64,000 bases of DNA from Diadema antillarum (GCF_040938485.1 NW_027271001.1:2728001-2792000), one strand, 5' to 3'; counted from the first letter of the stretch, positions 1 to 47,858 are shown. Notes: generated by a model from the sequence alone, not told the origin. Translations and numbers: made by a program.

Positions 1-429
1 CCCAACAATTCGTTGCAAGTCAATATCTGCGCAATGCAGGATTAAGACCAGGAGTTTAAGACGTTAAAAACTCATCTTTTGAATAATACTACTTAGATTT
101 GAGTTATGCATGTCATGACTATTATCTTGTAATGGGCAGTAGAGTATATCATTACTGTAGCTGCGCAATATAAATCGTCTGTTGAGAATGATAAGGGCGT
201 TACGTTGTCACTAAACCCATAGTGTTCGAGACAACTTAAAGCCCTTCTCATTCTCAAAAGAAGAAATGTCCTTTATTACTATCATCATCATTTATTGTTA
301 CAGTAGCTCTCCATTTTAACAATGATGAGAGTGATAGTCTGATGCCAATACCCCAGTCATATCAACATATCTATGGCAAACATCTATACAATCATTGGTG
401 TATTAACTTTGATATAAAAGCAAACATAC

Positions 430-735
430 TCTGTGCATATACTCTGGATAGAGTGTGATATACAGTCTGTTGACGCCATCCCACTTCACAAGGAATCCGC
501 TGCCCTCGACGAAGACAAACTTGGAAGAAGCTCTGCGTACGATCACCTCGCCATTCGAGTACGGGAGCAGAACCTCCTCACCGTTGACAAAGACGGCTCG
601 TTCCTGCTTCAGGTCAATCGGCGACGTACCGTTTACAATGACAGTGGCCGACTTGGTGCAGGTGACTGTTCGTGATGAGCGCATGTTGCACTCAACATTT
701 TCAGCTAGAACAGTCAGGTATTGCTCAACAAAGTC
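430..735 (-). CDS. SSPO: SSPO exon 14, vWD2 ([16 protein letters not shown]...[20 protein letters not shown])
   Basis: CATAG acceptor, AGA|GTATGT donor, phase 0-0. Confidence 0.9.
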
Positions 736-3700
736 CTATGGTGAGAGCAAGTTGAGAAAAAAGTTACAAAAGAACGTTCTTTTATCCCCTCTGAATATCT
801 AGGATTCTCCTAATTACCCTCATGCAAAAAACAAAACAAAACAACGAAATTTACTTCACCACATGCATTTTTCACAGTAACCATTATTATATCATGATAG
901 TGCATATCAATACAACATACTTCAAAATTAAAAAAACAACTTTACTCATTGCTTTTTGCTCAGTAGCATCCTGGACTACTGGATTGATATCAAGGCCAAA
1001 TACGTGTGGTCTATAAAAACATTGTCAATTTGCAATGATGGATTTGACATGCATACATTGTTCTTCAACTTGGTTGCAACGCAGCAATGGGTGAGGAAGG
1101 CATTCAACCTTTAAAATGATCACACTTCCATTCTGAGGTCTTAAAGATGTACTGCAAACTGAGAGAGACAATTTCTCAGCATGGTGTGTACCTCAACGAG
1201 AATGTAGCGACAGCCTCCCTGGAAGTTGTACTGCTTCTTGTCAAAGGTCAGGTAGTGTGGATCACCGACAGACTGACAGGTCGCCTGGCAGGGGGACTGG
1301 TCACAATCCCAAATCCCTCCAAGACATGTGCTGAAAATAACGTGATAAGCTTTCATTGTTTCTCAATGAGCACTTCATCAGATTTCTTTTCATTAATTGC
1401 TTTCTTGCTAACATGTTCACATTATTGGTATAAATGGAATGTTTGTTGTCAAAACTTTTATAGATGTATAACATTGAGAGCACAAGGTGCATTTGAGATA
1501 TACATATTGCAGTGTACCGAGTTTGAAGATGCTTATGGAATCAAATTAATAATCATTACAATAATTTTGGGATTACATATTGTTTTTCTTTGCATTAACA
1601 CGACAAAGTACACAATGTAATTAAGCGGTAAAATTATTAATTACCATGCTTATGAAGAATACAATATGATGGGTAGGAGATTCATAACTCTTACAAATCT
1701 TAAGACAGCATTGGATAAAATCAAATTTTGAGATGAACTTCTTTGGAAACTCATCGCAATTCAAGTTTGCATTTGTTAAATGTGACTGTTAATTGTTTCT
1801 TTATGGTAAGATTTATGTACATGCAAACATTTTGCAATGTACTCATATCTTCCTTGTAACTCGAAAAAGATTGTTATCAAAAGCATTAGATTTTTCAACT
1901 ATGAACGTTTCATTACACATGGATTTCTAAAAAATACTAACCAGAGGTTACACTTTGACCTGACTGTTCCTCCTGGTGGATACTTCTCCCGATTGTGCAC
2001 ACAGGGGCACTGGTCAGTGGTGATGCAGCGGCCATTGTCCAGGACAGTGCCTTCTGGACACTGGCAGCCGCTGACACAGTCCGCTGGGCAGTGTTTGGCC
2101 ATCTCCACTGGGTCCTGGGCTTCACAGGTTACAGGACACAGTGTGCTGCAGTCACTGTACTCCATAATGTCTGGACACTGCTTGGCTGGGATGGGAAGCA
2201 ATGCCAGGTTCAGAGTAGCAGGGTACTTAATTTTCATCTCATTTGCATAGAAAATTTCATTTGAATGAAGCAAGTACTGATGAGGTATCTTTGTATCAAT
2301 TACATTTATTGAGCTGATCAGAGTTCAGTTTCAAGAAATCAATATTGAAATTAATGGGAATTAATTACAATTTACATACAGTAAAACTTATTTGCATGAC
2401 AGTTTTGAAGGGAAACACACTAACTGCAGCTTAAAATGACTACCATTTACTGAACAAGTAGAGCATTCACTTCAGGGTCACACAGTGTTACTTTTAACAA
2501 TCCACAATAACAATGAATCTTTCCCTCCTTAGGTATATCTCTGAGGTGTACTACTGTAAGATTTTATACACCATGATGGTTAACATTATTCTTCAATCAT
2601 GCAAAATTTTGTGATGTTTGCAAGAGGGATATATGAAAACCATGTCATCAGCTAATGGTAAACTTTCCTCCTTGTGTCTGATTCAATCATACAGGTAATC
2701 ATCTTGACCAGTTGAAGACTACTGGTAGTCCCAATATACTCTGACAAGCATCTATCAGAAACATGTACTATAGCTATAATTTAAACCATCTTGTCCTCAA
2801 TGAGGTAACTTACGGCAGAAATCCTGTGTCCTCCAGTCTAGGACCACACTCTCCATGGCACACTGACGAGAGTAGGCATTGAGGGAGACACACAGGGCAT
2901 CCATCATCAGGTCATCTGACTCCCCAAACTGACACAGATCATACTCACAGCTCTTCACAAACACTGTCGGGTCATACTGTGTTTATGCAGTAAAGTAGGA
3001 AAAGAAAAATAAGCATTTATCAGGAAGTAGACACACAATATCTTGCATCACAGAGCCAACAAAATGTCCTTGCATGAGATTTATGGTTGTTGTTGGTTTT
3101 TTTTTTGCTTGTTTGTTTCTGTGGCTTGTCCGTTTATTATTTTTTTAGCTTTTTGTCCAGTCGAATTTGTAATAAACATAAACTTAAATAACCTGTTTGT
3201 TTTTTTAAGTAAACAAAACAAAAAAGTGATAAGAAACAGTGCAGCTTCAAATAATAATTCTTCATATCAAAGAATCTACCAAAGAACACTTTCGATGTTA
3301 TTTGTACTGTGAATTACTCAGCATTAAGCCAGACATCAGAAATCAGATCATACTTATAAAATTTTTTGGGACTGTTGTAAAAAACAACCATCTATAGGCC
3401 AATATCTGATGAGTCATTAAAGACCCGTCGCACCAATGTGGTATTTACTATATAATCACTCCTAAACACAATATCAGGAACCATTTTCAGTCACACTCTT
3501 TTTGGAGCTCAATCTACAGAGAAAGGTTGCATAAAATATACATCACTGGCATATAACTCACATCAGCATGACACTGTTGAAACTCGACAGCTTCATTGAG
3601 AACCTGACACAGACTCTTGGCGGTCGCAAGGCGAGTTGGATGAACGTCACAGGGGTGTGTATCAACAATCGCCTGGCATACCTTTCAAGATAGCAAGTGA

Positions 3701-6700
3701 TATTTTAACATATCAAAAAGCTGCTGCTCAGAAAATGTAATGGTTGAAACAAACTAACATTGTGATCCTGTTAACACCATAATAATATTATTTGATGGAA
3801 ATGCAGTCATTATGATCAAAGCCCCTGATATTTCTAACCAATGAATCAAACAGACAGATATTTTGTCTTCTTTACAACAATGTGCAATTTTGCAGGATCT
3901 GCAGAAATTGTGATTTCGAAAAAGACTACAGCTTTGAAATGAAAACATAGATCCTACTTGGAATATGCTAGAGTACGTAACAACAAGTTTAGTGTCTCCA
4001 GGGGAAAAAAAAGTGCTGGAAGACTGAACTGGACACTGCCTGCACAAGAACTGCAAAGAAAATACACAAATTCACACTTCTCCTTTCCATGGCACAACAT
4101 GTATTTTTGTACTGTTCATAGATTACCCAGTATTGTTGGTCATTCATTACCAGGCTTGAACCACAAAGGGTTGTTATCTCTGGCCCATTTTCCTGTGCAT
4201 ACATGAGACTAATAAAATTCACATGGTTTGCATTCTCTTCTTTCATGTAGAAGTGAAGTGGGGTTTGTTGCACGCAAACATGAATACCATAAACATTAAT
4301 GCTGTGTGTGCAGTGTTTGTTTTGGTTTAATCTTCCACAAAATGGTACCTGTCTTACCTCTCCTGGATATGGAACTTCCCAGGATGTTGCCAGCTGGGCA
4401 GGGTAGGAGGCATAGTCTCCACTTCTCATCATCCAGTCATCTGTTGTCATATACAAAGTGTGCAGAAAGGAGTTATGAATATCATTTCCACTTTTTAACA
4501 GTACATTATATATACTCGGCAAAATCATCCTCACAACTGAAAAAACAGCTATAATAATTGGAAAGGAGAGTTATTCATTGGTCTTGTCATGTCTTAGAGC
4601 ATGTTTTGTACTTACAGCTCATATATACAGGATACATGTATATTACATGTTTACAAAAATGTTTTCATTCAAAGCACTCCCACACCTACATTGTATTACA
4701 GATATGTAGTAGTGTGCTAATCTTTCATTGTGCTTGCTTTATACTTTGATGGGTATTGCAGATCTTTGTAGGCATTGTATATAGTTATGCAGTTACAAGT
4801 AAAATGCAGGAGATCACTGGACAGTGTAATTTCTATTGTCTTTTTTCCCCCCCTCCTATTCATGAAAGTACTTAATTTAGTACATATCCTAAAAAACTTG
4901 TTTGGGCTACTGCATTTGGCATTAAATGCAGTAAATAACTCCAGCTCGAATGGGACTGTAAACTTGTGGAGAATACAGGGATAATATCATCATACATGTC
5001 GCATGAAAAAAGGAGGTGCAATTTCTTTGACACATTAGCTACAAATGCAGCATTCTGTGTTTGAATTGAGTCAGGTTTGACCCATGTAAATAAACTGCAT
5101 TACCACCAAATTCATTACAAAAATAGAGAAGCACTCTGAGAGTGCAGACCTCCACCAGGCATGCAGATCATTTCCACCACTGATCTTGTTCTTCCATAGA
5201 GATTTCAGTGATTTCTACCAATACATACTTATAGCTTTGTGTGCCGAAAGTGGCCCGATTTCCCACTATAAAAGCCTTTGTTACATCATAAACCCTCAGC
5301 TGCACGGCGCGCCTCGCCCTAGAAGAAACCAAATGTAGAAACCAAAGATGCTTAAACTACAGCATGCACTCTAGTGCGCGCATGCAAACCTTAAATACGC
5401 ACAGCCTGAACTCCCAAGTTCATTGACCCTACATGCCAAAATATCAAAATCCTTCATAAATTCCCCCAAAATTCTTGGATCACTACCAAAATTTGATCAC
5501 CTGCTACTTGTATCATTCTAAACTTTTCCTGCAAGTTTCATCCAAATCCGTTAACTGCTTTTTGATTATTTCGCACAAGGACAAACACACAAACACAAAA
5601 ACCAACAGTAAAGGAAACTTAACCTCCTCCCTTGGCGGACGTAACAAATGATTCTCTGTAATCATATCTTGTTAACTGTTACAGATCTACATGCATATAA
5701 AGAGACATAGAACATACTCTCTGGATTGTCATCATACATTCCACAAAGGCCAATTGTGGACTCTTTCAGCTCAGCTAGCACAGTGACATACACCGTCATG
5801 TTGCTGTCCCATCGGGCCAGAACACCAAGGGTAGACTCCAGGAAAGTGAATTCTCCTGCCTTCTTCAGTGAGATGCCTGGAGGAAGAAAAAAAACAGAAT
5901 GAGAACTCATCCTTTAAAAGTTGTGCATTACTCTGGCCTCTGCAGTCTGAGGTATGTGCGGAAACATTTCGTCACTTAGTATGCCATCTCCTTCAAACTA
6001 TGAGATGATAAGTAGAGGTAGAGTAATCAATGTGGAGGTAAAAGCTGCTTATGAATACTTTCATCAATTTCAGACGCGAGTGAAGGCACATGCCAATTTA
6101 TGACTGCATCGACAAAATTTACCTATCAAACATAGATATACATTCACCCTTCAAAGACGTCATTCTATATTTTATAGGCACATGTGCATGAATACATCTG
6201 TATGTGTGGAGCTAACTGCACGCTAGGAGGCTGCAACTTTGCTCTGGGCAGATTTCGGATAAGACTGGAATATATACAGGGATGAAACTGGACAACTAGT
6301 TGACAGTAAGAGATAGTTTAGTACACAAGTGATTTATGCAGTTTGCAGTGACATTAAGCCGTTCCTTCAGAAATGCAGTCCCTAGCATTTGTCACAGGGT
6401 ATTAAAATGAGCACATGCATGAAGTAAACTTGCAACATGAGGGCCCTGTTGCATAAAAGTTCAGATCAAACACACATAAGTCAGAAAATCAAACACAAGT
6501 CTCTGAATAATCGGTTATGATTGGCTGATACCTGACTTATGTTTGATTGTATCTTTTTATACAACAGGGCCCTTGATTGCTGAAATAGGTGCTTGACAAA
6601 GGGCAAATTTACCATTTTCCATGAAAGGAAATGAGACCATTGGATTGTCATTGATGGAGACCATGTTCAGCTCTACTGTGATGACATCTAGCCCAAGGAT

Positions 6701-9700
6701 GAACTCCAGACTCTGTCATAAAAGAACATTATACAGCGAGGAAAAGAGAGCATAATGTCAAGACACATACAAAGACACAGAGACTGGGACATTCTTCATA
6801 CTTATTGACATACAGGTTCAGTTGGAGAGAGAACATTATTGTTCAATTCACATGATAATGTCTCCGTAAGTTGGTATGGACATCTTGAGCAGCATCTATT
6901 TGACACTCCATCTTCTCTGACTGAATTTACCTTTGGCTCATAATAAACACAGTATAATGCAGAGGAGAGGGCATACAATGATGCAACAAGGACTCATATA
7001 TTTCACATGATATGTAAATATAATAACCATCATGTCAGATGCATTTAAGTACTGTAATCACTTCAAAACACTACAAAAATATGCAATTTCACCCAAGTCC
7101 TGTCATCATTCAAAAATGCCCAAATGTCAGAATCTGTAAATGTCATTTACTAACCTTGGGGAAATAAGATCACAGATAAGAAGAAAATGCAAAGATGAAA
7201 GTTCACATGAAAAGGGTCATGAAGCTAATTCAAAAGCTGTTGTGTACACAGAGGCTCATAGCAACATACATACAGCCAGACCATTAGGAATTTCATTTTG
7301 CCCACATCTGATTAAACTTACCTTGAAGCATGTAGAAAGGACATCACAGTCCTTGTTCCGGATCGTCACTTGCCAGGTCCCATCCAGGGCTGCAGCCAAG
7401 GTGTAGGAACAGGTTCCAGAGAAGCTATAGAATGTCCCATCAAAGGTCATGAAATGATCACCACTCCAGGAGGCACACGTTGCTGATGTTCGTAGGGCAA
7501 GGGAGTTGTTCACTGCTGCAGCAACCTCAAGTTGATGCTGGTGTGGATCAGTAAATGACCATGTTGCCGGCGGCGGTTGGGTTGTAAAAAACTCTGGCTC
7601 ACCAACGTATGTAGGGTAGTCAGACTCCTCATCTTGGGAACCTCCTGCAGATGAGTGGAACAGTGAGATCCTGCTTGGTACAGACAGCTCTGATGCAAGG
7701 TTTATATCACTTTTTGAGGTGGATATGCCTGAAGTTGGTTTAGACTCTGTCAGTGGGGGGTTTGCAGTTGTGAACAATTCAGTGGGGACGACAAAGGGAG
7801 ACCACATGTCTATCAAAGACCGATAGGTATTTTGGTTGCCTTCAGACACTGACTCTTTTGGTTTAGAATGACTTCCAGGTGAAGAGACCTTTGAACTCTT
7901 TCCTGATGTGTTATTGCTCTTCTTAGCTGACTTTTCCTTAACAGAGCTAGCACTTGAAGACTTCTTGGAGTTAGATTTGCTTGCCTTGCTTGTTTTCTTG
8001 GAGTCATTTTTTCTTCCCTTGGAAGAAGAACCTTCAGATTCTTTAGACTCATTATTACTGGCATTAGCCGAGTCTTTACTATCCTTGGACTTGTCTGTAC
8101 CCTTTTCCTTTGAATCACGTTTTCTCCCTTTGGAAGAATTGTCACTCTCCCCAGATCTGTTCTTGTTAGATTCCTTAGACTTGCCCTTGCTAGATTCCTC
8201 GGAGTCATTCTTACTGCCTTTAGAAGAACTTTTACTTTCTTTAGTCTTGCCCTTACTTGATTCATTTGAGACCTTCCTCTCTTTGGAGGTTGAAACTTTT
8301 CTCTCCTTGGATTTGTCTTTGCTTGACTTCTTGGAGTCATTCTTCCTTTCCTTGGAAGAAGAACCTTGAGACTCCTTAGACTTGTTCTTGCTAGACTCCT
8401 TAGACTTATTCTCACTGCCTCTGGAGGATGAATCTTTATCTTCTTTGGACTTGCCCTTGCTAGATTCCTCCGAGTCACTCATATGACCTTTAGAAGATCC
8501 TTTACTTTCTGCAGACTTGTCTGTGTTCGATTGTTTTGAGTCAGTCTCCCTCTCTTTGGAGGATGAATCTTTACTCTCTTTGGATTTGTCCTTACTTGAT
8601 TCCTCTGAGTCATTCTTTCTCCCCTTGGAAGAAGAACCTTCAGATTCATCAGACTTGTTCTTGCTAGATTCCTTAGATTTATTTCTACTGTCTCTTGAAG
8701 TTGAGTCTTTGTCTTCTTTGGACTTGCCCTTGCTGGATTCCTTAGAGTCGTTCTCACTGCCTTTGGAAGAACTTTTACTTTCTTTAGTCTTATCTTTACT
8801 TGATTCCTTTGAGACCTTCCTCTCTTTTGAGGATGATACTTTTTTCTCCTTAGATTTGTCTTTGCTTGACTCCTTGGAGTTATTCTTTCTCCCCTTGGAA
8901 GAAGAACCTTCATACTCCTTAGACTTGTTCTTGCTAGATTCCTTAGATTCACTGTTACTGCCACTAGAAGAGCCTTTACTTTCCTTGGACTTGCCCTTGC
9001 TTGATTCCTTTGAGTCGCCCTTTCTCCCCTTGGAAGAAGAACCTTTAGACTCCTTAGACTTGTTCTTGCTAGATTCCTTAGACTTATTCTTACTACCTCT
9101 GGAGGATGAATCTTTATCTTCTTTGGACCTGACCTTGCTAGATTCCTTGGAGTCGTTCTCACTGCCTTTCGAAGAACTTTTACTTTCTTCAGTCTTATCT
9201 TTACTTGATTCCTTTGTGACTTTCCTTTCTTTTGAGGATGAAACTTTTTTCTCCTTAGATATGTCCTTGCTTGATTCCTTGGCATCATTCTTTCTCCCCT
9301 TGGAAGAAGAACCTTCAGACTCCCCAGACCCGTTCTTGCTAGATTCCTTAGACTTATTTCTACTGTCTCTTGAAGTTGAATCTTTATCTTCTTTGGACTT
9401 GCCCTTGCTAGATTCATCGGAGTCATTCATATGATCTTTAGAAGCCCCTTTACTTTCTTTGGACTTGTCTTTGCTTGATGCTTTTGAGTCATTCTCCAGC
9501 TCTTTGGAGGATGAAACTTTTTTCTCCTTGGATTTGTCCTTACTTGATTCCTTTGAGTCATTCTTTCTCCCCTTGGAAGAAGAACCTTCAGATTCCTTTA
9601 TGGACTTGTTCTTGCTAGATTCCTTAGACTGACTATTACTGCTGCTAGAAGAGCCTTTACTTTCCTTGGACTTGCCTTTGCTTTTTTCCTTTGAGTCATT

Positions 9701-12700
9701 CTTTTTCTCCTTGGAAGAAGAACCTTCAGACTCATTAGACTTGTCCCTACTAGATTCCTTAGACTTATTTTTACTGCCTCTGGAGGAAGAATCTTTATCT
9801 TCTTTGGACTTGCTCTTGCTTGGCTCCACAGAGTCATCTATGTAGCTTTCAGAAGGATCTTTTCTTTCTTTAGACTTGTCTTTGCTTGATGCTTTTGAGT
9901 CATTCTCCCGCTCTTTGGAGGATGAAACTTTACTCTTGTTGGATTTGTCCTTGCTTGATTCCTTGGAGTCATTCTTTCTCCCTTTGGAAGAAGAACCTTC
10001 AGACTCCCTTGACGTGTCCTTGTTAGATTCCTTAGAGATATTCTTACTGCCCTTGGATGAAGAACCTTTACCCTCCTTAGACTTGTTCTTGCTTGATTCC
10101 TTCGAGTCATTCTTTCTCCCTTTGGAAGATGAACCTCTATCCTCCTTAGAGCCTTCCTTATCATGAGAATTGCTTTTGCTATGTTTACTTTCATTTGAGT
10201 CAATGTTGCTCTCACTGCTTTTGCCTCGTTTTTCGATCACTGACATAAGATCTGAGCGTTCAGCATCTAGATTTAAACATACAAATCATGACAAACACAT
10301 GAAATTATTGAATGATTTAGAGTGATGTAATTCTTTGAATTTAAAGCGATCTCCTTTCAAAAGATGACATTTAAAGGCACCATCTTCACTACTTTTTTTT
10401 TCATTTTCAATGCAATATATTAGAATTACCCTGAGTGTAACCTTATTTATAGTGGCACTACAAAATCTACTTGTATCAGGGTATGATCTCAGTAAGTTGG
10501 TGTTGAGCAAATGCCAAATAAAGTAATAATAAAATATTCATTTTCTCATACAAAACATAGTATGATTGCCCACAATGATTTGAACAGAGAATCTATGCTT
10601 TATATAGCATTTGTAGCTGACCTCATAGTGAATCATCTTAAATAGAACTCCAATACATCTGTGGCTAGATATTTGTGCTGTTTCATTTCTGATGTATACA
10701 ATTTCTATAGGCTGACTGCATGATTGTCTCTCAAGAATGAAAATACACTAAAACTGAGCATTGATATGAAGTGCTAGTGTGAATGATAAAATGTCTAAAA
10801 TGCTGAATGTTTAACTATACGAAGACACTATCATTACATTTTGTAATAACATAATGAGCCATATGACATACAAAGCTCGAGGAGTGGTAACATCTATGCA
10901 TGAATAAAACCTTACATGCATGTGGGAGTCTGTGTATGTATTGAACTTTGGTTCAAAGATAATTTAAAGTAGCAATCATTAAAATAATATTCATACATCA
11001 TGTAATGTATAGAATTCTGCTTTAACTTGTTTCATACTGAATTCCAAAATTCCCATAGACTTAATACATGGGCCACCAGAGATTACCACCAGAGTCAACA
11101 ATTTTGAGATGAACACCATGGGAACTAACACTTAACAAAAAGCGGGAAGTATGCATATTGGGTTTATCATGACAAGTAAGCAGATGATTGAAAATGAAAT
11201 AAGAGGGTTCAAGAGGGAAAAATGGTTCAGAGAAATAAGAGGGCAAAGGGAAGAGAGAAAGAGGATGAGAAAGAGGGAGAAAGAGAGGGAGAGATATATG
11301 ACTGGACACAAAAAATAAAAAGAATGCCAGTTTAGGATACACAAGGAAAACAATTAGCACAGTGGGAAAAGTAATAGCAGTTAAGAACAAAATACATGAA
11401 ATAGAATATAGGAGGGTGAAATACACACAGACATTCTACATGTAACATAAAGGCTGAAACTAGAGAAGAAAGTAAACCTAGGGTATCAATATCTTAAAAA
11501 AACAAAAACAAAAGAGCAAAACAAAAAACAAAAGCACTGAACTGTCACAGTAAGACATCCAAGCTGTTGCAGATCTAATATTGACAGAGCTGCCACCTTT
11601 CTGCCTGTTTTTCATTCAAAGGTCTTCAGCCGTACTACTTAATTAAATTTTGGATACAGTACACACAGTGTTTACTTACTCAATGGCTGATGTGCAAATA
11701 TTGATAATTAGATTTTGGTAGTAATTATAGGTCAAGGTCATTTCTCCTGGTCCTGTCTATTCTGGTAAATTAAAGATTATTCTAAGCTAAGCTTTTGACC
11801 ACTGATTTAAACTCAACACAAAGGAGAGGCCAGGAGACATATTAGTTTATGTTGATACATGACTTTAATACCAAAATTGTTTCAATCAACCCTCAAGAAT
11901 GTACAGAAATGCAAACTCACAAGTCAGAAAATGCCAAGGACATGATGATGAATAATGTTTCTACAACTTACATTTAACTTTAAAATGGCAAAAAGAAACA
12001 ACTTTTTCTTTCCAGTCAAATTTAGTGTTCTTGCCCTGGAATCAGAATGTCTGTCATTGGAACAGGGGCAGCCAGTTTGTGTACAAGGACAATGTTATCT
12101 TGAGTTGGTGTTGCTTAAAGGGTTCAAGAATGGACAGGCAAGCTTTCCAGTATCAATTACTAAATCTGCATCAGTCATGAATGCCTTTAGTACTGACAGC
12201 TTGCTGGATGATCACCATAAAGACAAAAATATATAATTTGTGGATAGTATTTATTAGAGATTATTTACCTGTTTGTGTTTGGAAGCATCAGGCCTCTCAT
12301 TTGTTATGTCTATTCTCATAGATGTCTACTCTTAATAATCACATATTAGTTTCTTTCAGGAGAGGTATATTCTCCACTCAACGTTTAATTTCCTCATCAC
12401 TGTTTATCACATTACTGCTGTTTCAAAAACCTTTATATCCTTTTTTGATTTTGGTAATTGCTTACACTTAAACATGGAATATAAGTTTCTGAAGTAGTAG
12501 TCAAAAATCTAATCTAAAAATGTACATAATGCAAAGATCATTTGGCAGTGTAAAATCTGTTTCTCTTCTCAGGCACTACAATGATATGATAGAAAATAGG
12601 ACAGATGATATAGAAGTCACAAATACATTTATATTGGACATCAATCTACCCCAGTGATCCCTACACCATACAGAATCACTACATCACTGTGACGGTTGTT

Positions 12701-15700
12701 CCTGCATTGTCCTATATACAGGCTTAATATTCCATTTGTTTGCAAAGGAAAGTGATATGCTATCACAGACGTGTAAAAGAGGAAACTGCTCTGTGAAGCT
12801 CAAAGTGTTTATTTAAAAAAAAAAGGATGAATACAAAAGATGAAGATTGAAATCATGAAATTATGAATACCAAAATGGCAACAGAATGTAGAATGGTAGG
12901 TTAGTTATCCACAGCTGCCCTCTGCACCTACATGGCACACACCATACATGGTGTACACACCAAAATGATAGTTCTTGAATTACACTCTTAAAGTGCAATG
13001 TAATAATTTATGCTTAAGACATACTTCACCTAAATGGATCTGATTTACATCATTACCTCTGTTGACTATTTAAAGTGCAAATTTGATTACAAGTAAGGAA
13101 AATGGAAGGCACAGAAAAGCCTTCTAGGTAAAATATTCTGTTGTCCTACAGATTTAGCACAGAAGGTAATTACACAGCTGTTGTATCATTCCAAGTTGAG
13201 CTGTGAGAACTCTTATCAGCCTGCTATCTTCAGTGTTGACATGGCAACTCACCATCCTCATGGTGATCACCTTCCTGGCCTCCACTCCTCTTCTTGACAC
13301 TGAAGAGCTCTTCCTTCATGGCCCCAGAAAGCACATCTAAAAAATCACAGAAGTAAGAGGTGTAGGAACAGGTGACATTAATATGTGAACTCACATGCTT
13401 TCTTACATAACAAAACTCACACAAAACTGCACAAGTCAATTTCCAAGCAGATCTCAAAATGTGCATTCTGGGGCACCAATGTTAATTTCTGAATTTTTGT
13501 ATTTTCTGAGTTAATGGTCCTTCCTCTATACAAATTCAAAATTTGAAAGTACAAAGCTTAATGAAAGTACGAGATTTTGTTTGTTTGTTTGTTTATTTAT
13601 TTGTTTTTGCAGACACTATTTTTTTTTTCTATATGATGTTTTCTTCATTGCTAATGCAGGAGGCACACGAAAGCGTACATGATGAATCTACACAAACTCT
13701 TTCATAATAAAAACGGGAAATTCATTCTTGGCAGTGGTCATAGATACCTAATAAACAAAGTGGTCCTAATGAAAAGTGGGACCCATCTTCTAATAGGACC
13801 TACAATATTTGGGCCACTTTGCTTTGCTTTGTGTTCGGATATCTCAGCCAATTCAAAACCGATTTTCATCTCACAAACTTTTAAATCCTCTTCAAATTGT
13901 ATGCTCTTTGATATTTCATATTAAGTGGTTTCATCTCGCATGAATACAAAACCTGAATCCCCATCTCAACCAAAACTATACCATCCCTTTAATTCCATCC
14001 TTATGCCATTGCACGACATCTTGTCATCAGATCTTGACCTTCAGGACTAACCTTAAATTTGCTTGGTCCTAAAATGAGACCAGTAAAATGCTTCATCAGT
14101 TTGTGATTGTACTAAGCTTTGAGTGAAACTTAGTAATTCTTAATCTTTCCTCTAAATCTGTTATATATTTAAAATTTGACCATTCATCCTTAATTGCAAC
14201 TTATATAAAATATTGCCATATCATATAACTTTGTACATACGACTCAGCTTCATCAAAGAACATCATACACTGTAACTAAATTTGATGAAAATCTAAACAT
14301 TGTTTAATGGTCATGCCCATTACATATAAATTGTACACAGTTCTTCATTTCATGTTCTGTTGGGCTACATTCCTTGGGAAGTGATGAGCAGGCAATTTAC
14401 TACACATTTCACTAGGTAATCATTCAAAACATTACAAAACACTCTTTACATCTGCATTCACACTTCATCTAAAACTTTACATTAATTCAGTCACACTTTA
14501 CATGTGCACCCCATTTTCAAGATGCAAGCAGTCATTTGCACTCATTATTTATTAGTAGAGAAGACTAACAGTTTAATAGCTCTCCAAAACTCTAAGCTCC
14601 AAGACTAGTTTAAAGTAAATGATTGGGTTTAACTTCACCCACGAACACAGACTACTGACATTTTCAAATTAGAGTATGACTAAGAAGGATTCCTGCCATC
14701 TTGGCCAGAGCAATGCACTAAAAACTTTTGGCCCCTTCTCACCTGTAAAGTACTGGCATCTTGCCCCCTGGAATCCAGCTGGACAGGCACACTGCTCAGG
14801 GGCCACACATGTCCCACCATTAGCACAGCCCAAGGTACACACAGCTGGATTGATACATGAAATGTATATATGTAAATAAGGCAAGTATGTATACATTGCA
14901 AATGTACACACAACTAGAATTCAAAGATAATATGTATGTATGTATGTTTGTATGTATGTACAAAGTATGTATGTATGTGCATATGTATGTATATGTATGT
15001 ATGTATGGAAACACCCAGAGGATAAAAGTCTATCAGAAGAGTTGATGTCATGTATCTACCATACTGAAAACAAATCAACAGCATAGACTTTGCTTTTCTT
15101 CACAGATAACCAATTACTGTCACTTGAAACCAACCAGAACTTCATCAGAAAATGTATAATTTATGGAATCATGTCATCTCAAAACCTACTGCATGCAGGT
15201 TCTGAGACAGGTGTGACATTAATTTTGCTCCTGATTAAAAAAATAATAATAATAAAGGAATTACATGTTTCTATATGATTATTGAGAAAAACTTGGTCTT
15301 TTAAACCTCATACCAACAGTTGTTTATATATTTTCTATAAAAAAATGGTGAAATGAAGGGGAAAAAAACAAATCTTTATCTTAAAGGGACAATACGGTTT
15401 TGGTTGAGATGGGGAATTCAAATTTGAACTTTCTACGAGATAATCAGAAACCACTTATGAAATGTGAAAGAGCATACAATTCTAAGAGGAATTCAAAGTT
15501 TACTTGACAAAGATCCCTTTTGAAACGGCTGAGATATCCAAAAACAAAGAAAAAAAAGTTGTCCCAATAAAAGATGGGTTCCACCTTCTTAATAAGACCT
15601 CTTGGTTTTTGATATATCTCAGCCATTTCAAAACTGATTTTCATCAAATAAACTTTGAATTACTTTTCGAATCGTATGCTCTTTCCTACTTCATAAGAGG

Positions 15701-17690
15701 TTTACTCATTATCTCATAACAGAGTTGGAAACCTGAAACCCCATCTCAACCTAAACTATACCACCCCTTTCAGTGGTTCCTCAAAACATGCAGAGGTTTA
15801 CGCATTCAAGTGAGTGAGCAGATGTACCTTCATCACAGAGGGATCCCTGGTAACCCGAGCAGCACTCTACAGTTGGGACAATAGTCTCCTTCTGACCAGT
15901 CCTATTCACAGGGGGCAATGGACAATACATGATATCATTTCATGACTTTTTATCAAATACCAGCCACTGATTGGACAAGCATGATGATCATGTGATGATG
16001 AAACATCTGATATCAAATAATGGAACAATGATATCACAGTGCAATTGATGTAACACATACTTTAGTCCATGCAATGCTGAAAAAAAAAGATGATAAATTA
16101 GAAAAAAATCAAACAACCAGAGCCCCAGCAAGGTTAAAGATGTATAGCATTTCAATCATTCAAATGTGACATTCTGCAGACTCCCTCCCCCATCAGGTTA
16201 TATCAACTGGCGCTATTTACATCTACTCTATGATAATCCCAATAGGGTGTTCACTTCTAAAAACATTGTTGACTATGGAAAGAAAAACAATTTATAAGAC
16301 AATGAAAATCCAAAGCCTGGTAGAATGAACAAAAATATAATGTTATTTTTCAAATTTATGGGCATCTCCAAAGAGTCGGGGCCCTGCAACATAAAGTGAC
16401 CTGTAAGTAATCCTCTAATACTTCATTCCAGCCATTTATTTGGGCAGTGACGATTGATCAACAGTTTTCTGACACATATTTGATGATCTCTGTTCAAAAC
16501 ATCTAGTATTTGAGGAGGGGACATGCTGGATAAAGCTTACCGCATGACTGGACAGAGGGTCACCCCGTCCACTTCATATGGGGTTGTGTCCTTGTCCAGG
16601 ATCCAGCCCTCAGATTTGACCTTGGGGTCACGGAGGTCACTACAGGGTAGGAGGCTGCGCTCGGTCACTTCCTGCTGGACCTTCTTGGAGCCTTCACAGA
16701 ATCGTGACCTGGATAAAATATAGAATCCAGTATGGTTACCAGTCATTCCAGACAAGGCTCACTGGATGTCATGAGCTAATAATAACATAATACATACAAT
16801 TTCTATGGCGCCGTTTTCCACTCTGATTAAATGCTCAAGGCGCTTTACACCAAAGCAAAAAGACTGACAATATATGCACCATAAAAGAAGAAGATGAAAA
16901 AAAAGACATGAAAGTCTGTCTCCAAAACACACTGTGAAATAAACAGGATTTTACGTGGGAAAGATTGCTTCTTTTTTGTTTTCCTGGAGATATGTAATGA
17001 GACAATCATATGTTATCAAATTGCAAACATTTCACTACTCTCTGACATCGTTTAAAAAACAGCTATACTCAGGTGACTGTTTTAGCCAAAGTATTTATTG
17101 TGTAGAAGAATAAAAAAGAAAAAGCAGAATTTGAGGAGCACATATCTTTATCTCAATGTTCAATATGAAACATGTGAAGCCCTTGACTTTCAGCTCTTAT
17201 ACACAAATTCTTGATAGTTGGATTACATTTACACATCCCAAAGGTCTGGCTACAAGCAGTATACCAAGTTGACAGCTAATAATATGAAGAGATGTACTGT
17301 ATAAGCTGTTATGTTCATGTACAGATATTTTCACAAATGAGTTCATGGACATTTTCGCGAGATGCCGTTTCCATGCATTGACACTGAGGCTATGGTAAGT
17401 GCGCTATTACCCTTGCATGTGGCAACATTTTCGAGTGTTGTTAAATTCACAGTCCAACAGTGATTCGAGAAATTCGCAAAAATTATACCTTCCTGAAAAT
17501 AACAGCTACTACAGTATTTATCATAGTTACTGATATTCTGCTAAATTCAGAAGAACAGCATTGAACTGTGGAAATCACAAAATCAAAGTCATCCAAGAAC
17601 AGACACTTACTCTGCCTGAGCTTGTGGGTGACATCCTCCGAGTACCAGCATGGCGATGGCCACTGGTACACACCATTGCAGGAAGGACAT
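430..17690 (-). CDS. SSPO: SCO-spondin orthologue, 5' part (14 coding exons, about 1589 aa; gene continues beyond the left edge of the window)
   Basis: The exons 17611-17690, 16541-16708, 15828-15901, 14743-14844, 13253-13336, 7322-10266, 6613-6712, 5718-5876, 4358-4440, 3562-3681, 2814-2976, 1942-2185, 1192-1330 and 430-735 all have GT-AG boundaries and matching phases (4767 nt in total). The domain order is signal peptide-EMI-EGF-repeat-vWD-C8-TIL-vWC-like-vWD. The motifs [21 protein letters not shown]...LLPC...GWILD...LCP...[24 protein letters not shown] and VRRASS match my recollection of vertebrate SCO-spondin. Confidence 0.87.
1192..1330 (-). CDS. SSPO: SSPO exon 13, end of vWC-like segment and start of vWD2 ([10 protein letters not shown]...[29 protein letters not shown])
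   Basis: GDPHYxTFD vWD start motif, TTTTCAG acceptor, GAG|GTACAC donor. Confidence 0.92.
1942..2185 (-). CDS. SSPO: SSPO exon 12, TIL domain ([20 protein letters not shown]...[10 protein letters not shown]...[22 protein letters not shown])
   Basis: TIL Cys pattern, phase 1-2 GT-AG boundaries. Confidence 0.92.
2814..2976 (-). CDS. SSPO: SSPO exon 11, C8 domain ([15 protein letters not shown]...[27 protein letters not shown])
   Basis: The C8 signature C..L.AY...C......WR...C, donor C|GTAAGT. Confidence 0.9.
3562..3681 (-). CDS. SSPO: SSPO exon 10, start of C8 ([40 protein letters not shown])
   Basis: Phase 0-0, TTGAAAG acceptor, GAT|GTGAGT donor, C...L...F..CH pattern. Confidence 0.85.
4358..4440 (-). 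CDS. SSPO: SSPO exon 9, end of vWD1 ([28 protein letters not shown])
   Basis: ACAACAG acceptor, GAG|GTAAGA donor, resembling the FxxSW end-of-vWD motif. Confidence 0.82.
5121..5645 (+). mobile_element. Helentron-associated (HINE/DINE-1-like) non-autonomous element
   Basis: 5' hairpin GCACTCT-G-AGAGTGC, subterminal IR ACCTCCACCAGG / CCTTGGCGGACGT, and an ACAAAC microsatellite before the 3' end. The family assignment is an inference. Confidence 0.5.
5718..5876 (-). CDS. SSPO: SSPO exon 8, vWD1 (GISLKKAG...WDSNMTVYV...[14 protein letters not shown])
   Basis: The vWD GLCG motif, phase 1-1 GT-AG boundaries. Confidence 0.9.
6441..6573. mobile_element. PIF/Harbinger-like MITE
   Basis: TIR GGGCCCTGTTGCATAAAA / TTTTATACAACAGGGCCC, TGA on both flanks. 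A partial relative lies near 16379. Confidence 0.72.
6613..6712 (-). CDS. SSPO: SSPO exon 7, vWD1 ([33 protein letters not shown])
   Basis: TTTTATGACAG acceptor, G|GTAAAT donor, phase 0-1. Confidence 0.8.
7322..10266 (-). CDS. SSPO: SSPO exon 6, giant exon: Ser/Lys/Glu tandem repeat, Pro/Thr spacer and start of vWD1
   Basis: Stop-free ORF 7256..10246 that extends to an acceptor at AAATCTAG|AT (10266), with donor TTCAAG|GTAAGT at 7322. It ends with the vWD motif [27 protein letters not shown]. Confidence 0.88.
7840..10240 (-). repeat. Coding tandem repeat of about 32 units of 66-69 bp (22-23 aa; consensus [23 protein letters not shown]) with degenerate flanks
   Basis: Units were aligned by eye from the translated ORF 7256..10246. 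Confidence 0.9.
13253..13336 (-). CDS. SSPO: SSPO exon 5, short linker ([28 protein letters not shown])
   Basis: TTTTTTAG acceptor, G|GTGAGT donor, phase 1-1, open frame. There is no domain signature, so inclusion is inferred from the splice signals. Confidence 0.65.
13755..13988. mobile_element. Right half of the same Kolobok-like MITE family
   Basis: ATATCTCAGCC...CCCCATCTCAACCAAAACTATACCATCCCT|TTAA; the left end is missing. Confidence 0.7.
14743..14844 (-). CDS. SSPO: SSPO exon 4, EGF-like domain ([34 protein letters not shown])
   Basis: Six-Cys EGF pattern, phase 1-1, ATCCAG acceptor and G|GTGAGA donor. Confidence 0.88.
14933..15006. repeat. (TATG)n microsatellite
   Basis: Read directly. 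Confidence 0.9.
15385..15768. mobile_element. TTAA-flanked Kolobok-like MITE (384 bp)
   Basis: TTAA|AGGG...CCCT|TTCA ends and long internal inverted arms (GCTGAGATATC / ATATCTCAGCC). Confidence 0.8.
15828..15901 (-). CDS. SSPO: SSPO exon 3, end of the EMI domain ([24 protein letters not shown])
   Basis: GAATAG acceptor, G|GTACAT donor, CCxGY-G-xC EMI signature. Confidence 0.85.
16541..16708 (-). CDS. SSPO: SSPO exon 2, EMI domain N-terminal part ([22 protein letters not shown]...TLCPVMR)
   Basis: TTTTATCCAG acceptor, CG|GTAAGC donor, phase 2-2. Confidence 0.88.
16778..16850 (-). mobile_element. L2/CR1-type 3' tail of a LINE or SINE
   Basis: The minus strand reads GTAAAGCGCCTTGAGCAT...AACGGCGCCATAGAAAT...TTATTATT, the typical stem-loop plus (TTA)n tail. 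Confidence 0.55.
17295..17516. mobile_element. TACTGTA...TACAGTA MITE, about 220 bp
   Basis: Termini TACTGTATAAGCTG / CAGCTACTACAGTA with internal TTTTCGCG motifs. Confidence 0.7.
17611..17690 (-). CDS. SSPO: SSPO exon 1, signal peptide [26 protein letters not shown](E)
   Basis: ATG at 17690, a hydrophobic core, and donor GA|GTAAGT in phase 2 matching the next exon. The frame differs from the listed ORF 17483..17773. Confidence 0.8.
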
Positions 17691-19229: not shown

Positions 19230-29591
<10,362 letters not shown>

Positions 29592-46285: not shown

Positions 46286-46570
46286 ATGAGTAACCAGCCA
46301 CCTCAGCAACCCCACCCTCACCAACACCCACACTCACCCCATGCCCCACCCCCTACCAGCTCCCCTGCACCTGATGGTGTGGGGAAACCCCCTCCAGGTG
46401 TAGGGGGAGGTGGTAGTGGTGGCGGTGGTGGCAGCGGTGGGGGTGGGATGGGGGAGCCCCTGTCGCCACCGGACATGGCAAGACATAATGGTGGTGCATT
46501 GTCCCCAGACAGGGGCCCACTGCCGACAGGGGAACATGGGTACGACCCAGACCGAGCCAGGAAATTGGAG
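46286..46570 (+). CDS. First coding exon of an unidentified gene (Pro/His/Gly-rich N-terminus MSNQPPQQPHPHQHPH...YDPDRARKLE)
   Basis: GCCATG start with an in-frame TAG 9 nt upstream, GC-rich coding-like composition in an AT-rich background, and a strong GAG|GTAAGA phase-0 donor. No domain was recognised. Confidence 0.65.
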
Positions 46571-47858
46571 GTAAGACTGTTTAACCCATTGAACACTAGC
46601 TTTATGCGGTGGTGTAATAAACCTTTGGCTGTAGTACCTCCCATGGAAAGTGGTTGCCATATTTGCTGTCATAGCTTGTCAGAAATTATACACTGCGTGG
46701 TCCAAAACTATTTCTTAGGTATTCATAAATGGTGATATGATGAGGTATATAAATTGTGATGTGCAAATATAAGTTAAGAATTATGAGTTGTGAAAATTTA
46801 TGTCAAGTTTCAGTTCTCTTATTTTTATTTTTGTTTTTTTGGTGGGGTTGAATTTGTCATGTTCAATCTTAAAATGGACAAGAAGTGATAGCTGAATATT
46901 AACATTCACACTGGTGACATTAACCTTTCTGTTTGTATTTGAACTCATATAATGTTACTGTTTTACAATCAAATTTATGCAATAGTTTGGTTTTGATGTA
47001 AAGACAGATTCCTTTCATTATCCCAAAATGTTATTTGAGCTATGAAAGGGACACTTCGTACAAATGGGCCAGCATTTCTTGGTGCGGGTAAGTTCTTGTA
47101 TAATTTGTGATATAACCATTGCAGTGTTTCTCACAGTAAGCACCTGTATGGATTAGCTTGCTCACTAAAGAGCCAATGCCATGTGACGGATCAGCTCGTA
47201 ACCGCTCCGTGACATGTGGTGCAAAAAAAAAAAATGTTTTAGTGCCCCGCATGCTTTGGGAATTCATGTGCCGCAGATTGACGACGTTTGCAGCGTGTGG
47301 CTGCAGTCGTCTCCCTGTGTCATGATCGTGTGGGAGAGTGTGTCTGGTGAGGCAGGCGTGCCCAGGTCTAGCACACTTAGCACCGTCTGTGCCCAATGAC
47401 TGGTGGTCTGGCGTGCAGCGCAGGACTGTCACGTTGTAATCCAATCAACGGGTGAATTTGATTAATGACCTTCTGATGGCCATGTCCACATTAGGACAGT
47501 CTCAACAAGAGGCGCAGATAATTGTTTATTTGGTATGGGATACATGCAGGCATCTACTGTATACCATACTTACGTGCGGCCTTAGGGAGTACGACTTTCG
47601 TTAACTTTTTCAATACCGGTACTTCTCACACTTTCCTTGAAGAGTTGTTGACGTTGTAGGTGAATGCAAACTTTGATATAGAACTTTGCTGACACAAGTT
47701 GTGTGCAATAAAACTCGAGTACATGGTATGAAGATTATAGTGTACTTAAAAAACAAAACAAAACACACACACACTCAACCCAACACTCTAAATAATTGGA
47801 AAACAAGTCTATTTTCATTTTCTTTGTTGCACTGTGTCCCTGTGAATTTTGTATATGT

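What the first reader, a model, noticed from the sequence alone, without database searches (positions are those of the whole stretch)
7322..10266. SCO-spondin with an ~800-aa Ser/Lys/Glu polyampholyte inserted between EMI/EGF and vWD1
Seen: one 2945-bp exon encodes about 800 aa of Cys-free, nearly hydrophobe-free S/K/E/D/G/N sequence, then a Pro/Thr spacer, then the start of vWD1 in the same exon. The repeat therefore cannot be skipped without losing vWD1 unless an internal acceptor is used. Known: vertebrate SCO-spondin builds the Reissner fibre and, as I recall it, has only a short linker at this position. Inference: a lineage-specific secreted, intrinsically disordered, charge-patterned domain grafted onto a self-polymerising vWD/TIL scaffold. 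This could be a coacervate, gel, adhesive or mineral-binding matrix protein rather than a classical Reissner-fibre component.
Basis: partly seen in the sequence, partly recalled or inferred. Interest (0 to 1): 0.75.

Follow-up and report, generated by a model that had tools for sequence, protein, structure and literature searches.

The report
Charged repeat inside urchin SCO-spondin
A sea-urchin relative of SCO-spondin (the protein that builds the vertebrate Reissner fibre) carries a protein-coding block of about 800 serine-, lysine- and glutamate-rich residues just before its first polymerising domain. The purple urchin has a shorter, different repeat at the same spot, while sea star, acorn worm, amphioxus and vertebrates have none, so it is an urchin-lineage add-on whose function is untested.

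Summary
Minus-strand exon 7322-10266 has AG/GT borders and enters in phase 1. It encodes 981 codons: a 799-aa Cys-free S/K/E/D/G/N tandem repeat, a 119-aa Pro/Thr-rich spacer, and the first 52 aa of a VWD domain.

The repeat is coding. It has 0 stops against about 53 expected, clear codon periodicity, and a median dN/dS between repeat units of 0.34.

I rebuilt the 5' end as signal peptide, EMI (two exons), EGF, a small exon, then this exon. VWD1-C8-TIL-VWD2 follow downstream. Their best non-echinoderm matches are vertebrate SCO-spondins at colinear positions. The LDLa, TSR and CTCK parts that define SCO-spondin lie outside the window.

The insert is lineage-specific but not unique to this species:
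- The S. purpuratus orthologue (split by NCBI into three models, one named "hemocytin-like") has the same exon with a younger 18-aa repeat, 197 aa in total.
- The homologous Asterias exon has only about 80 codons.
- The EMI-to-VWD1 distance is 48-109 aa elsewhere, about 380 aa in S. purpuratus and 994 aa here.

Each unit carries one N-x-S sequon and S-K-E motifs. The charges are well mixed, not in blocks.

No RNA run was listed, so splicing and expression are unverified. A phase-compatible internal acceptor exists at 7644. The coacervate, adhesive and mineral roles remain speculation.

The parts
17611..17690 (-). Exon 1: ATG plus a 26-aa signal peptide ending ...AQA. The exon ends in phase 2.
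   Evidence: Read from the sequence. It is colinear with a weak match at the start of the S. purpuratus locus.
16541..16708 (-). Exon 2: N-terminal half of the EMI-like domain (Cys1-Cys3 and a GW-L-D motif).
   Evidence: aligns with Asterias, amphioxus, acorn-worm and vertebrate SSPO EMI regions. BLASTP to the Asterias SCO-spondin-like protein gives E 2.8e-4.
15828..15901 (-). Exon 3: C-terminal half of EMI, with the CC-x-G-Y-x-G-x-x-C motif.
   Evidence: It is 83% identical to the S. purpuratus exon.
14743..14844 (-). Exon 4: EGF-like module, phase 1-1.
   Evidence: Pfam EGF_2 at E 4.8e-6. Sequence read.
13253..13336 (-). Exon 5: 84-nt linker exon, phase 1-1, with a conserved ...LFS-x-x-KRSG motif.
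   Evidence: It is 83% identical to S. purpuratus. The Asterias equivalent is at L002 11909-11971.
7322..10266 (-). Exon 6, the finding: 2945 nt, phase 1 in and phase 0 out, 981 codons.
10232..10266 (-). Lead-in of exon 6 containing the conserved M-x-(V)-I-E-K-R-G-K motif.
   Evidence: Matches the S. purpuratus ...LMMIEKRGK motif.
7835..10231 (-). Ser/Lys/Glu tandem repeat, 799 aa. The basic unit is 23 aa (69 nt) and the super-units are about 45, 91 and 135 aa. It holds 37 N-x-S/T sequons and 61 S-x-E motifs, and the unmodified net charge is +81.
7478..7834 (-). Non-repetitive Pro/Thr/Ser-rich spacer, 119 aa. Its last third is conserved with S. purpuratus (TTQPPP..., NNSL-x-LRTSATC).
   Evidence: 67% identity over 97 aa, including the VWD start.
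7322..7477 (-). First 52 aa of VWD1. The sequence here is GDHF, not the self-cleaving GDPH.
   Evidence: Pfam VWD profile positions 1-47. All 223 HMMER hits fall on residues 884-981.
7644..7646 (-). Candidate internal 3' splice site: cag|G with 75% pyrimidines upstream, phase-compatible with the donors at 13253 and 14743. Using it would skip the whole repeat. A weaker site lies at 7482.
   Evidence: Crude scan only. Its use is untested.
6613..6712 (-). Exon 7: continuation of VWD1.
   Evidence: It is 76% identical to S. purpuratus.
406..5913 (-). Further exons of the same gene. Bounds given are open-frame fragments, not exact exons: VWD1 in 5665-5913 and 3992-4570; C8 in 3517-3684 and 2800-2982; TIL in 1902-2324; VWD2 (with GDPH) in 1144-1362 and 406-735. 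The gene runs off the window at position 1.
   Evidence: Pfam hits. Colinear best hits to vertebrate SSPO.

Best explanation
Exon 6 is a genuine coding exon of a sea-urchin SCO-spondin-family gene. The gene is a secreted protein with signal peptide, EMI, EGF, then VWD-C8-TIL assemblies.

In the echinoid lineage, the 5' part of an ancestrally short exon (about 80 codons in a sea star) was expanded by tandem duplication of a Ser/Lys/Glu-rich seed. It now spans 362 codons in S. purpuratus and 981 codons here. The product is an intrinsically disordered, very hydrophilic segment of about 800 aa. It tethers the EMI-EGF head to the first D assembly.

Inferred mechanism: as the segment passes through the secretory pathway it is decorated. 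Each unit carries one N-glycan sequon and has S-K-E sites that fit the Golgi casein-kinase (Fam20C) consensus. It would then act as a swollen, hydrated polyelectrolyte spacer or brush. In role it resembles a mucin domain but is chemically different. It would change the spacing, solubility and ligand binding of the polymer, rather than form a folded module.

Shown here: exon structure, coding constraint, lineage distribution, motif enrichment. Inferred: disorder, glycosylation and phosphorylation, spacer function.
For: Coding:
- 0 stops in 799 codons against about 53 expected.
- Third codon positions are near-uniform while positions 1 and 2 are extremely skewed, and all six Ser codons are used.
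- Pairwise dN/dS between 91-aa super-units is 0.15-0.62 (median 0.34) at dS 0.2-0.9.

Gene model:
- All seven 5' exons have consensus splice sites and matching phases.
- The same exons, in the same order and phases, occur in S. purpuratus and Asterias.

Family:
- Pfam finds VWD, C8, TIL and EGF.
- The six Cys of EMI align with vertebrate SSPO.
- VWD1, TIL1 and VWD2 exons hit vertebrate SSPO at colinear positions, at 46-60% identity.
- Amphioxus and acorn-worm proteins with the same EMI-EGF-VWD head are named SCO-spondin-like, and the amphioxus one carries LDLa x8 and TSP1.

Lineage-specific expansion:
- A HMMER search of 1.84 billion representatives found no match to the repeat itself.
- Exon 6 is about 245 nt in Asterias, 1088 nt in S. 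purpuratus and 2945 nt here.
- The EMI-to-VWD1 distance is 48-109 aa elsewhere, against about 380 and 994 aa in the two urchins.

Decoration:
- N-x-S/T count is 37 against 16.9 +/- 3.2 in shuffles (maximum 28).
- S-x-E count is 61 against 30 +/- 4.2.
- The unrelated S. purpuratus unit also keeps one N-K-S sequon and two S-K-E motifs per unit.

Swollen coil:
- Fraction of charged residues 0.47, kappa about 0.10, below shuffled sequences.

Background: vertebrate SSPO is a secreted glycoprotein, and echinoderm radial glia secrete material recognised by anti-SSPO sera (PMC10570448, PMC5543218).
Against: - There is no transcript or peptide evidence for this species. No RNA run was listed, so read laying could not be used.
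- A phase-compatible internal acceptor at 7644 could remove the repeat in some or all isoforms.
- Glycosylation, phosphorylation and disorder are predicted from sequence only.
- Sequence-composition constraints could depress dN/dS somewhat in such a low-complexity region.
- The LDLa, TSR and CTCK parts that define SCO-spondin are outside the window. Echinoderms may have several SSPO-like paralogues, so strict orthology is not proven.
- The comparison database was enriched for SSPO.
- The S. purpuratus model that contains its repeat is a computational prediction.
Confidence: 0.6

Rival explanations
1. The repeat is encoded but absent from the mature functional protein. Either it is usually spliced out through an internal acceptor, or it is removed together with the EMI-EGF head as a pro-segment by a convertase acting at the conserved dibasic motifs (K-K-R in exon 5, I-E-K-R at the start of exon 6).
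For: A cag|G site at 7644 has 75% upstream pyrimidines and the right phase. All upstream exons are phase 1-1, so several skipping paths keep the frame. The NCBI Asterias model already skips the phase 1-1 EGF exon that is present in the genome. The K-R motifs are conserved between two urchins, and one of them in Asterias.
Against: Purifying selection, with dS up to 0.9 among units and not one stop or frameshift, shows the repeat is translated and matters. The S. purpuratus gene model includes its repeat as CDS. The K-R sites lack the Arg at P4 of a classical furin site. A cleaved pro-segment could still be functional.
Confidence: 0.2
2. The domain is a heavily phosphorylated Ser/Lys polyampholyte that drives coacervation, adhesion or Ca2+/mineral binding. 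It would turn the protein into a glue or skeletal-matrix component rather than a neural Reissner-substance homologue.
For: There are 61 S-x-E and 50 S-x-S motifs. With phosphorylation the charge would switch from +81 to strongly negative locally, next to Lys, which recalls phosvitin and sandcastle-worm cement (my own knowledge). SCO-spondin-like proteins occur in limpet adhesive mucus (PMC7333891, abstract and title only).
Against: No expression or proteomic data exist. Charges are finely interleaved (kappa about 0.10), which disfavours block-driven self-coacervation. The domain lacks DOPA-type Tyr, Gly-rich or Asp-rich mineral motifs. The S. purpuratus version is His/Arg/Pro-rich and only 197 aa, so no single chemistry is conserved beyond S-K-E and the sequon.
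Confidence: 0.15
3. The stretch is not protein-coding at all. It would be a purine-rich satellite inside an intron, or an assembly artefact, that happens to be open.
For: The coding strand is A/G-rich. A second frame has only 4 stops, so open frames are easier to obtain here than in average DNA.
Against: Frame 0 has 0 stops against 32-plus in every shuffle. There is strong three-base periodicity and dN/dS well below 1. The indels between units all preserve the frame. There is no N run. The same exon with its own repeat exists in S. purpuratus. Another note of this scan reports a like insert on another piece of the genome (s1-229812, unchecked).
Confidence: 0.03

Closest known systems
Vertebrate SCO-spondin (SSPO), e.g. 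the teleost, gar, Xenopus and coelacanth proteins fetched here (P0055, P0227, P0252, P0247)
   Same: Signal peptide; six-Cys EMI with CC-x-G-W/Y-x-G-x-x-C; then VWD1-C8-TIL-VWD2 in the same order. The exon-level best hits fall at colinear positions.
   Different: Vertebrates have 83-89 aa with six Cys between EMI and VWD1 and no Ser/Lys/Glu repeat. The LDLa, TSR, FA58C and CTCK parts could not be compared because they lie off the window.
S. purpuratus XP_030845697.1 'hemocytin-like' (P0001) with its two flanking models (114 aa and 6845 aa)
   Same: Orthologous locus with identical exon order and phases. It is 69-79% identical in VWD1 and has the same I-E-K-R-G-K lead-in. It carries a Ser/Lys/Glu-rich tandem repeat in the same exon, with one sequon and S-K-E motifs per unit.
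   Different: The unit is 18 aa (with a His/Arg/Pro tail), in 10.5 nearly identical copies, 197 aa in total. It is therefore a young array. The array here has about 34 diverged 23-aa units. The gene is annotated as three separate genes under a different family name.
Asterias amurensis, Glandiceps talaboti and Branchiostoma SCO-spondin-like proteins (P0015, P0028, P0027)
   Same: The same EMI-(EGF)-linker-VWD1 head. In the Asterias locus, which was the only one of the three fetched, the homologous exon starts with the same split Asp codon (G|AT).
   Different: The linker is only 48-57 aa. The Asterias exon has about 80 codons and no repeat.
PTS (mucin) domains of gel-forming mucins
   Same: A long, single-exon, fast-evolving tandem-repeat, disordered and probably glycosylated segment within a VWD-C8-TIL polymer. 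Lang et al. 2016 (PMC4948705) note that invertebrate mucin-like proteins are closest to SCO-spondins.
   Different: The composition is Ser/Lys/Glu with little Pro or Thr (1.6% and 3.5% over the whole exon, the Pro/Thr-rich spacer included). The position is N-terminal to D1 instead of central. The predicted glycans are N-linked (one sequon per unit) rather than dense O-GalNAc on Thr.
Secreted Ser-rich phosphoprotein domains (vitellogenin phosvitin, sandcastle-worm Pc3); from my own knowledge
   Same: Very Ser-rich, Cys-free, with S-x-E / S-x-S kinase motifs. Phosvitin also lies in a protein that carries a VWD domain.
   Different: No sequence relation was found. Ser is 30% rather than over 50%, Lys is 21%, and phosphorylation is untested.

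Membership tests
SCO-spondin (SSPO) | Secreted protein with an N-terminal EMI domain ahead of the first VWD | tested here: met
   A signal peptide is encoded at 17690-17611. Exons 2 and 3 supply six Cys and the CC-x-G-Y-x-G-x-x-C motif, aligned with vertebrate, amphioxus, acorn-worm and sea-star SSPO heads. Pfam gave no EMI hit at the thresholds used, either for the two exon peptides (E up to 1 and 0.1) or for teleost and amphioxus SSPO (E up to 0.01), so this rests on alignment.
SCO-spondin (SSPO) | N-terminal VWD-C8-TIL assemblies colinear with SSPO D1-D2 | tested here: met
   Pfam finds VWD, C8, TIL, VWD in order. Best non-echinoderm hits are vertebrate SSPO at residues about 282-337, 463-547 and 551-698. 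The database used was enriched for SSPO.
SCO-spondin (SSPO) | LDL-receptor class A repeats after the D assemblies | not testable with these tools
   The gene leaves the window at position 1. The S. purpuratus 6845-aa and Asterias 5716-aa downstream models could not be fetched. Amphioxus P0027, which has the same head, has LDLa x8.
SCO-spondin (SSPO) | Many thrombospondin type-1 repeats alternating with TIL, and a C-terminal cystine knot | not testable with these tools
   Outside the window.
SCO-spondin (SSPO) | One-to-one orthology shown by a tree or reciprocal best hits | tested here: inconclusive
   Only exon-by-exon BLAST against 273 fetched proteins was done. Paralogues in echinoderms are not excluded.
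Gel-forming mucin | Central Pro/Thr/Ser-rich (PTS) O-glycosylation domain | tested here: not met
   Over the whole exon Pro is 1.6%, Thr 3.5% and Lys 21%, and that figure includes the Pro/Thr-rich spacer. The repeat lies before D1. Whether a PTS domain exists further downstream is unknown (note s1-229997, unchecked).
Hemocytin / hemolectin (the NCBI name of the S. purpuratus fragment) | VWD/TIL protein with discoidin (FA58C) domains, known in arthropods as a clotting factor | not testable with these tools
   The name is an automatic one. Discoidin domains, if any, would lie off the window. The arthropod and priapulid 'hemocytin-like' heads shown carry no CC-x-G-W/Y-x-G-x-x-C EMI motif (read by eye, not run through the pattern).
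Fam20C-type secreted phosphoprotein | Clusters of S-x-E / S-x-pS in a secretory-pathway protein, and actual phosphorylation | tested here: inconclusive
   The motif is enriched two-fold over shuffles (61 against 30 +/- 4.2). Phosphorylation itself cannot be tested here.

The most novel reading that the evidence does not exclude
Echinoids have twice independently inflated a Ser/Lys/Glu seed in the head of their SCO-spondin homologue. This produced a modifiable (N-glycan plus phospho-Ser) polyelectrolyte domain of 200-800 aa, with strong length differences between lineages and perhaps between haplotypes. The domain would give the radial-glia 'Reissner substance' of urchins a new material property, such as Ca2+-dependent gelation, phase separation or adhesion, that sea stars, hemichordates and chordates lack.
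Probability: 0.12. Interest if true: 0.7.

Novelty: new variant of a known kind. Interest (0 to 1): 0.42.

Why it matters
SCO-spondin is central to the argument that echinoderm radial glia are homologous to chordate radial glia, and its function in echinoderms is stated to be unknown (PMC10570448).

This work has three consequences:
- The urchin gene is mis-split in public annotation, into three models with one called "hemocytin-like".
- The urchin gene carries a large, selected, lineage-specific disordered domain that no antibody or orthology study has taken into account.
- The repeat gives a clean handle, in the form of a unique probe or epitope, to ask where the urchin protein is made and what it does.

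The domain is also nearly invisible to trypsin-based proteomics, because it has a Lys every 4-5 residues. That may explain why it has gone unnoticed. In itself, gain of a low-complexity repeat in a giant matrix protein is a common kind of event.

Tried and rejected
- Whole-exon HMMER search of 1.84 billion representatives: 223 hits, all confined to residues 884-981. Nothing matched the repeat.
- Word-index searches with the whole exon and with the S. purpuratus fragment: nothing beyond the query itself. The low-complexity words filled the candidate list, and the length window (540-1717 aa and 284-903 aa) excludes full-length orthologues. These blanks are therefore weak.
- Search with a long teleost SSPO as query, to reach the 6845-aa urchin model: the 120 rows shown were all vertebrate SSPO, zonadhesin and FCGBP. 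The urchin protein was not retrieved.
- ESM Atlas by features: best score 0.76, below any useful level.
- Pfam on candidate 5' fragments: no EMI hit. The scan of teleost and amphioxus SSPO (E up to 0.01) listed none either, so Pfam is not a usable test for this EMI.
- Paper search for the S. purpuratus accession: no paper.
- Rejected idea: a non-coding satellite (see rivals).
- Rejected idea: a block-patterned polyampholyte (kappa below shuffled).
- Rejected idea: glycosaminoglycan attachment. There are only 4 S-G dipeptides and none has an acidic residue one or two places before it.
- Correction: my first approximate coordinates for exons 2-4 were wrong by 2-6 nt (one search returned no AG). 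They were corrected by re-reading.

Full report
**1. Observation**

On the minus strand an open frame runs from 10285 to 7259. Read from 10264, the exon gives 981 codons without a stop.
- Residues 12-810 are a tandem repeat. Tandem Repeats Finder reports a 69-nt unit x29 with higher-order periods of 273 and 405 nt.
- Anchors of the G-S-S-S-K-G-R-K type recur every 45-46 or 90-91 residues.
- Composition is S 30%, K 21%, E 10%, D 7%, G 6%, N 6%. There is no Cys and only 23 of 799 residues are V/L/I/M/F/W/Y.
- Residues 811-929 are a non-repetitive Pro/Thr/Ser-rich spacer.
- Residues 930-974 match positions 1-47 of Pfam VWD.

**2. Is the repeat coding?**

The coding strand is purine-rich, and a second frame has only four stops, so an open frame alone is weak evidence. 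Four other results settle the question.
- Frame 0 has 0 stops, where shuffles give 53 on average and never fewer than 32.
- Codon positions 1 and 2 are extremely skewed (2% C at position 1, 2.6% T at position 2). Position 3 is almost uniform, and all six Ser codons are used.
- Six 91-aa super-units, compared pairwise, give dN/dS 0.15-0.62 (median 0.34) at dS 0.2-0.9.
- All length differences between units keep the frame.

The array is therefore old, translated, and under purifying selection on its protein sequence.

**3. Gene model**

Reading the sequence upstream, I find these minus-strand exons:
- Exon 1, 17690-17611: ATG and a 26-aa signal peptide.
- Exon 2, 16708-16541, and exon 3, 15901-15828: the two halves of a six-Cys EMI-like domain.
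- Exon 4, 14844-14743: EGF (Pfam EGF_2).
- Exon 5, 13336-13253: a small linker exon.
- Exon 6: the finding.
- Exon 7, 6712-6613.

Every junction has AG/GT, and the phases fit (2-2, 2-1, 1-1, 1-1, 1-0). Downstream open-frame fragments carry the rest of VWD1, C8, TIL and the start of VWD2. The gene then leaves the window.

Every search was done exon by exon.

**4. Family**

- Per-exon alignment places the six Cys and the CC-x-G-Y-x-G-x-x-C motif of exons 2 and 3 on the EMI of vertebrate SCO-spondins and of sea-star, acorn-worm, amphioxus and bivalve SCO-spondin-like proteins.
These rank ahead of the FCGBP, zonadhesin, mucin-like and hemocytin-like proteins also in that set. The set was enriched for SCO-spondins, so this supports the assignment without proving it.
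- Amphioxus P0027 shares the EMI-EGF-VWD head and carries LDLa x8 and TSP1.
- The LDLa, TSR and CTCK parts that define SCO-spondin (PMC4948705) are outside this window and could not be tested.

I file the gene as SCO-spondin family by its N-terminal architecture, with full membership open.

**5. Relatives of the insert**

A HMMER search of the whole exon against 1.84 billion representative proteins gave 223 hits. All of them lie on residues 884-981, and none on the repeat.

The best hit is S. purpuratus XP_030845697.1, "hemocytin-like": 69% identity, 516 aa. That protein begins with M-I-E-K-R-G-K, matching M-S-V-I-E-K-R-G-K here. It continues with a different tandem repeat before a Pro-rich spacer and VWD1.

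I fetched its locus, with these results:
- All seven exons are colinear with the same phases.
- Exon 6 there is 1088 nt (362 codons). It has 10.5 almost identical 54-nt units of the S-K-E-N-K-S-G-S-K-E-S-P-R-H-H-S-H-G type, 197 aa in total.
- NCBI split the gene into three models of 114, 516 and 6845 aa.

In the sea star Asterias amurensis, the homologous exon starts with the same split Asp codon. It has only about 80 codons: a 28-aa spacer plus the VWD1 start. An EGF exon exists in that genome, but the model skips it.

The distance from the last EMI Cys to the first VWD1 Cys is as follows (taxon names):

| Taxon | Distance (aa) |
|---|---|
| Five vertebrates | 83-89 |
| Amphioxus | 57 |
| Acorn worm Glandiceps | 48 |
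| Bivalve | 109 |
| Asterias (model) | 49 |
| S. purpuratus | about 380 |
| This window | 994 |

The insert is therefore an echinoid-lineage expansion inside an ancestrally short exon. It was inflated separately in the two urchins. The array here is old and diverged; the S. purpuratus array is young and homogeneous.

**6. What the two arrays share**

Beyond Ser/Lys/Glu richness, each unit in both species keeps one N-glycosylation sequon (N-D-S here, N-K-S in S. purpuratus) and S-K-E motifs. Counts here, against shuffles:

| Motif | Observed | Shuffles |
|---|---|---|
| N-x-S/T | 37 | 16.9 +/- 3.2 (max 28) |
| S-x-E | 61 | 30 +/- 4.2 (max 48) |
| S-K-E | 47 | 7.4 |

- The unmodified net charge is +81 and the fraction of charged residues is 0.47.
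- Charge patterning is kappa about 0.10, lower than shuffled sequences (0.153 +/- 0.017). Opposite charges are finely interleaved rather than blocked.
- By the usual rules for polyampholytes (my own knowledge), this predicts an expanded, solvated coil. It argues against block-driven self-coacervation unless phosphorylation changes the charge map.

**7. Most likely mechanism**

- Shown: a secreted SCO-spondin-family protein whose EMI-EGF head is separated from its first D assembly by about 920 residues of selected, low-complexity sequence.
- Inferred: the segment is disordered, is N-glycosylated about once per unit, and is possibly phosphorylated at S-x-E. It would act as a hydrated polyelectrolyte tether or brush that alters packing, solubility or ligand capture of the polymer.

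Rivals:
- The repeat is skipped through an internal acceptor (cag|G at 7644, phase-compatible), or removed with the head at conserved K-R motifs.
- It is non-coding. This one is close to refuted.

**8. Limits**

- No RNA run was listed, so splicing and expression in this species are untested.
- The identification of the genome as Diadema antillarum comes from other notes of this scan. I did not verify it. The best hit to S. purpuratus only shows that the genome is an echinoid.
- A like insert is noted on another piece of this genome (s1-229812). Published D. antillarum assemblies are haplotype-resolved or oversized (PMC13511894; bioRxiv 10.64898/2026.05.24.727502, abstracts only), so that piece may be the other haplotype. 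I could not check this.

**9. Verdict**

This is a real, coding, echinoid-specific repeat expansion in the head of an SCO-spondin-family gene. It is a new variant of a known kind. It is moderately interesting, mainly as a handle on the unknown role of SCO-spondin in echinoderms and as a correction to public annotation.

Noticed in passing
L001 (S. purpuratus, GCA_000002235.4 AAGJ06000019.1) 2118-24421: Public annotation splits one gene into three models: 114 aa (signal peptide plus EMI), 516 aa 'hemocytin-like', and 6845 aa. The Asterias amurensis orthologue is likewise split into 370 aa and 5716 aa, and its model skips an EGF exon that is present at L002 11272-11358.
   Followed up: partly
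window 1144-1362 (minus strand) versus 7322-7477: VWD2 carries the G-D-P-H motif known as an acid-labile self-cleavage site in some mucins and FCGBP. VWD1 has G-D-H-F instead.
   Followed up: no
window 13253-13336 and 10232-10266 (minus strand): Two dibasic motifs (…S-V-K-K-R-S-G and …V-I-E-K-R-G-K) are conserved with S. purpuratus, and one of them with Asterias (…V-E-K-R-S-A). They may be convertase sites flanking the start of the repeat.
   Followed up: partly
window 20900-25800 (minus strand): The upstream neighbour is a multi-exon NOL1/NOP2/Sun-type RNA cytosine methyltransferase gene. Four fragments hit Pfam Methyltr_RsmB-F, and it lies in the same orientation as the SCO-spondin-like gene.
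   Followed up: partly
window 27770-28483 (plus strand): A 237-aa open frame with the zinc-binding tail of a reverse transcriptase (Pfam zf-RVT, E 1e-9). This is a retroelement fragment.
   Followed up: partly
window 46286-46735 (plus strand): A 149-aa ATG-initiated frame rich in Pro, His, Gln and a Gly run, in the most GC-rich part of the window (44%). It has no Pfam hit. It could be the first exon of a regulatory protein.
   Followed up: no
P0023, P0024 (Logan contigs, unknown organism): Two proteins called on short public-run assemblies read straight across the exon 6/7 junction (…S-T-C-R-K|Q-I-E-F…), so they look transcript-derived. They have a short Thr/Ser/Pro spacer and no Ser/Lys/Glu repeat before VWD1.
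   Followed up: no
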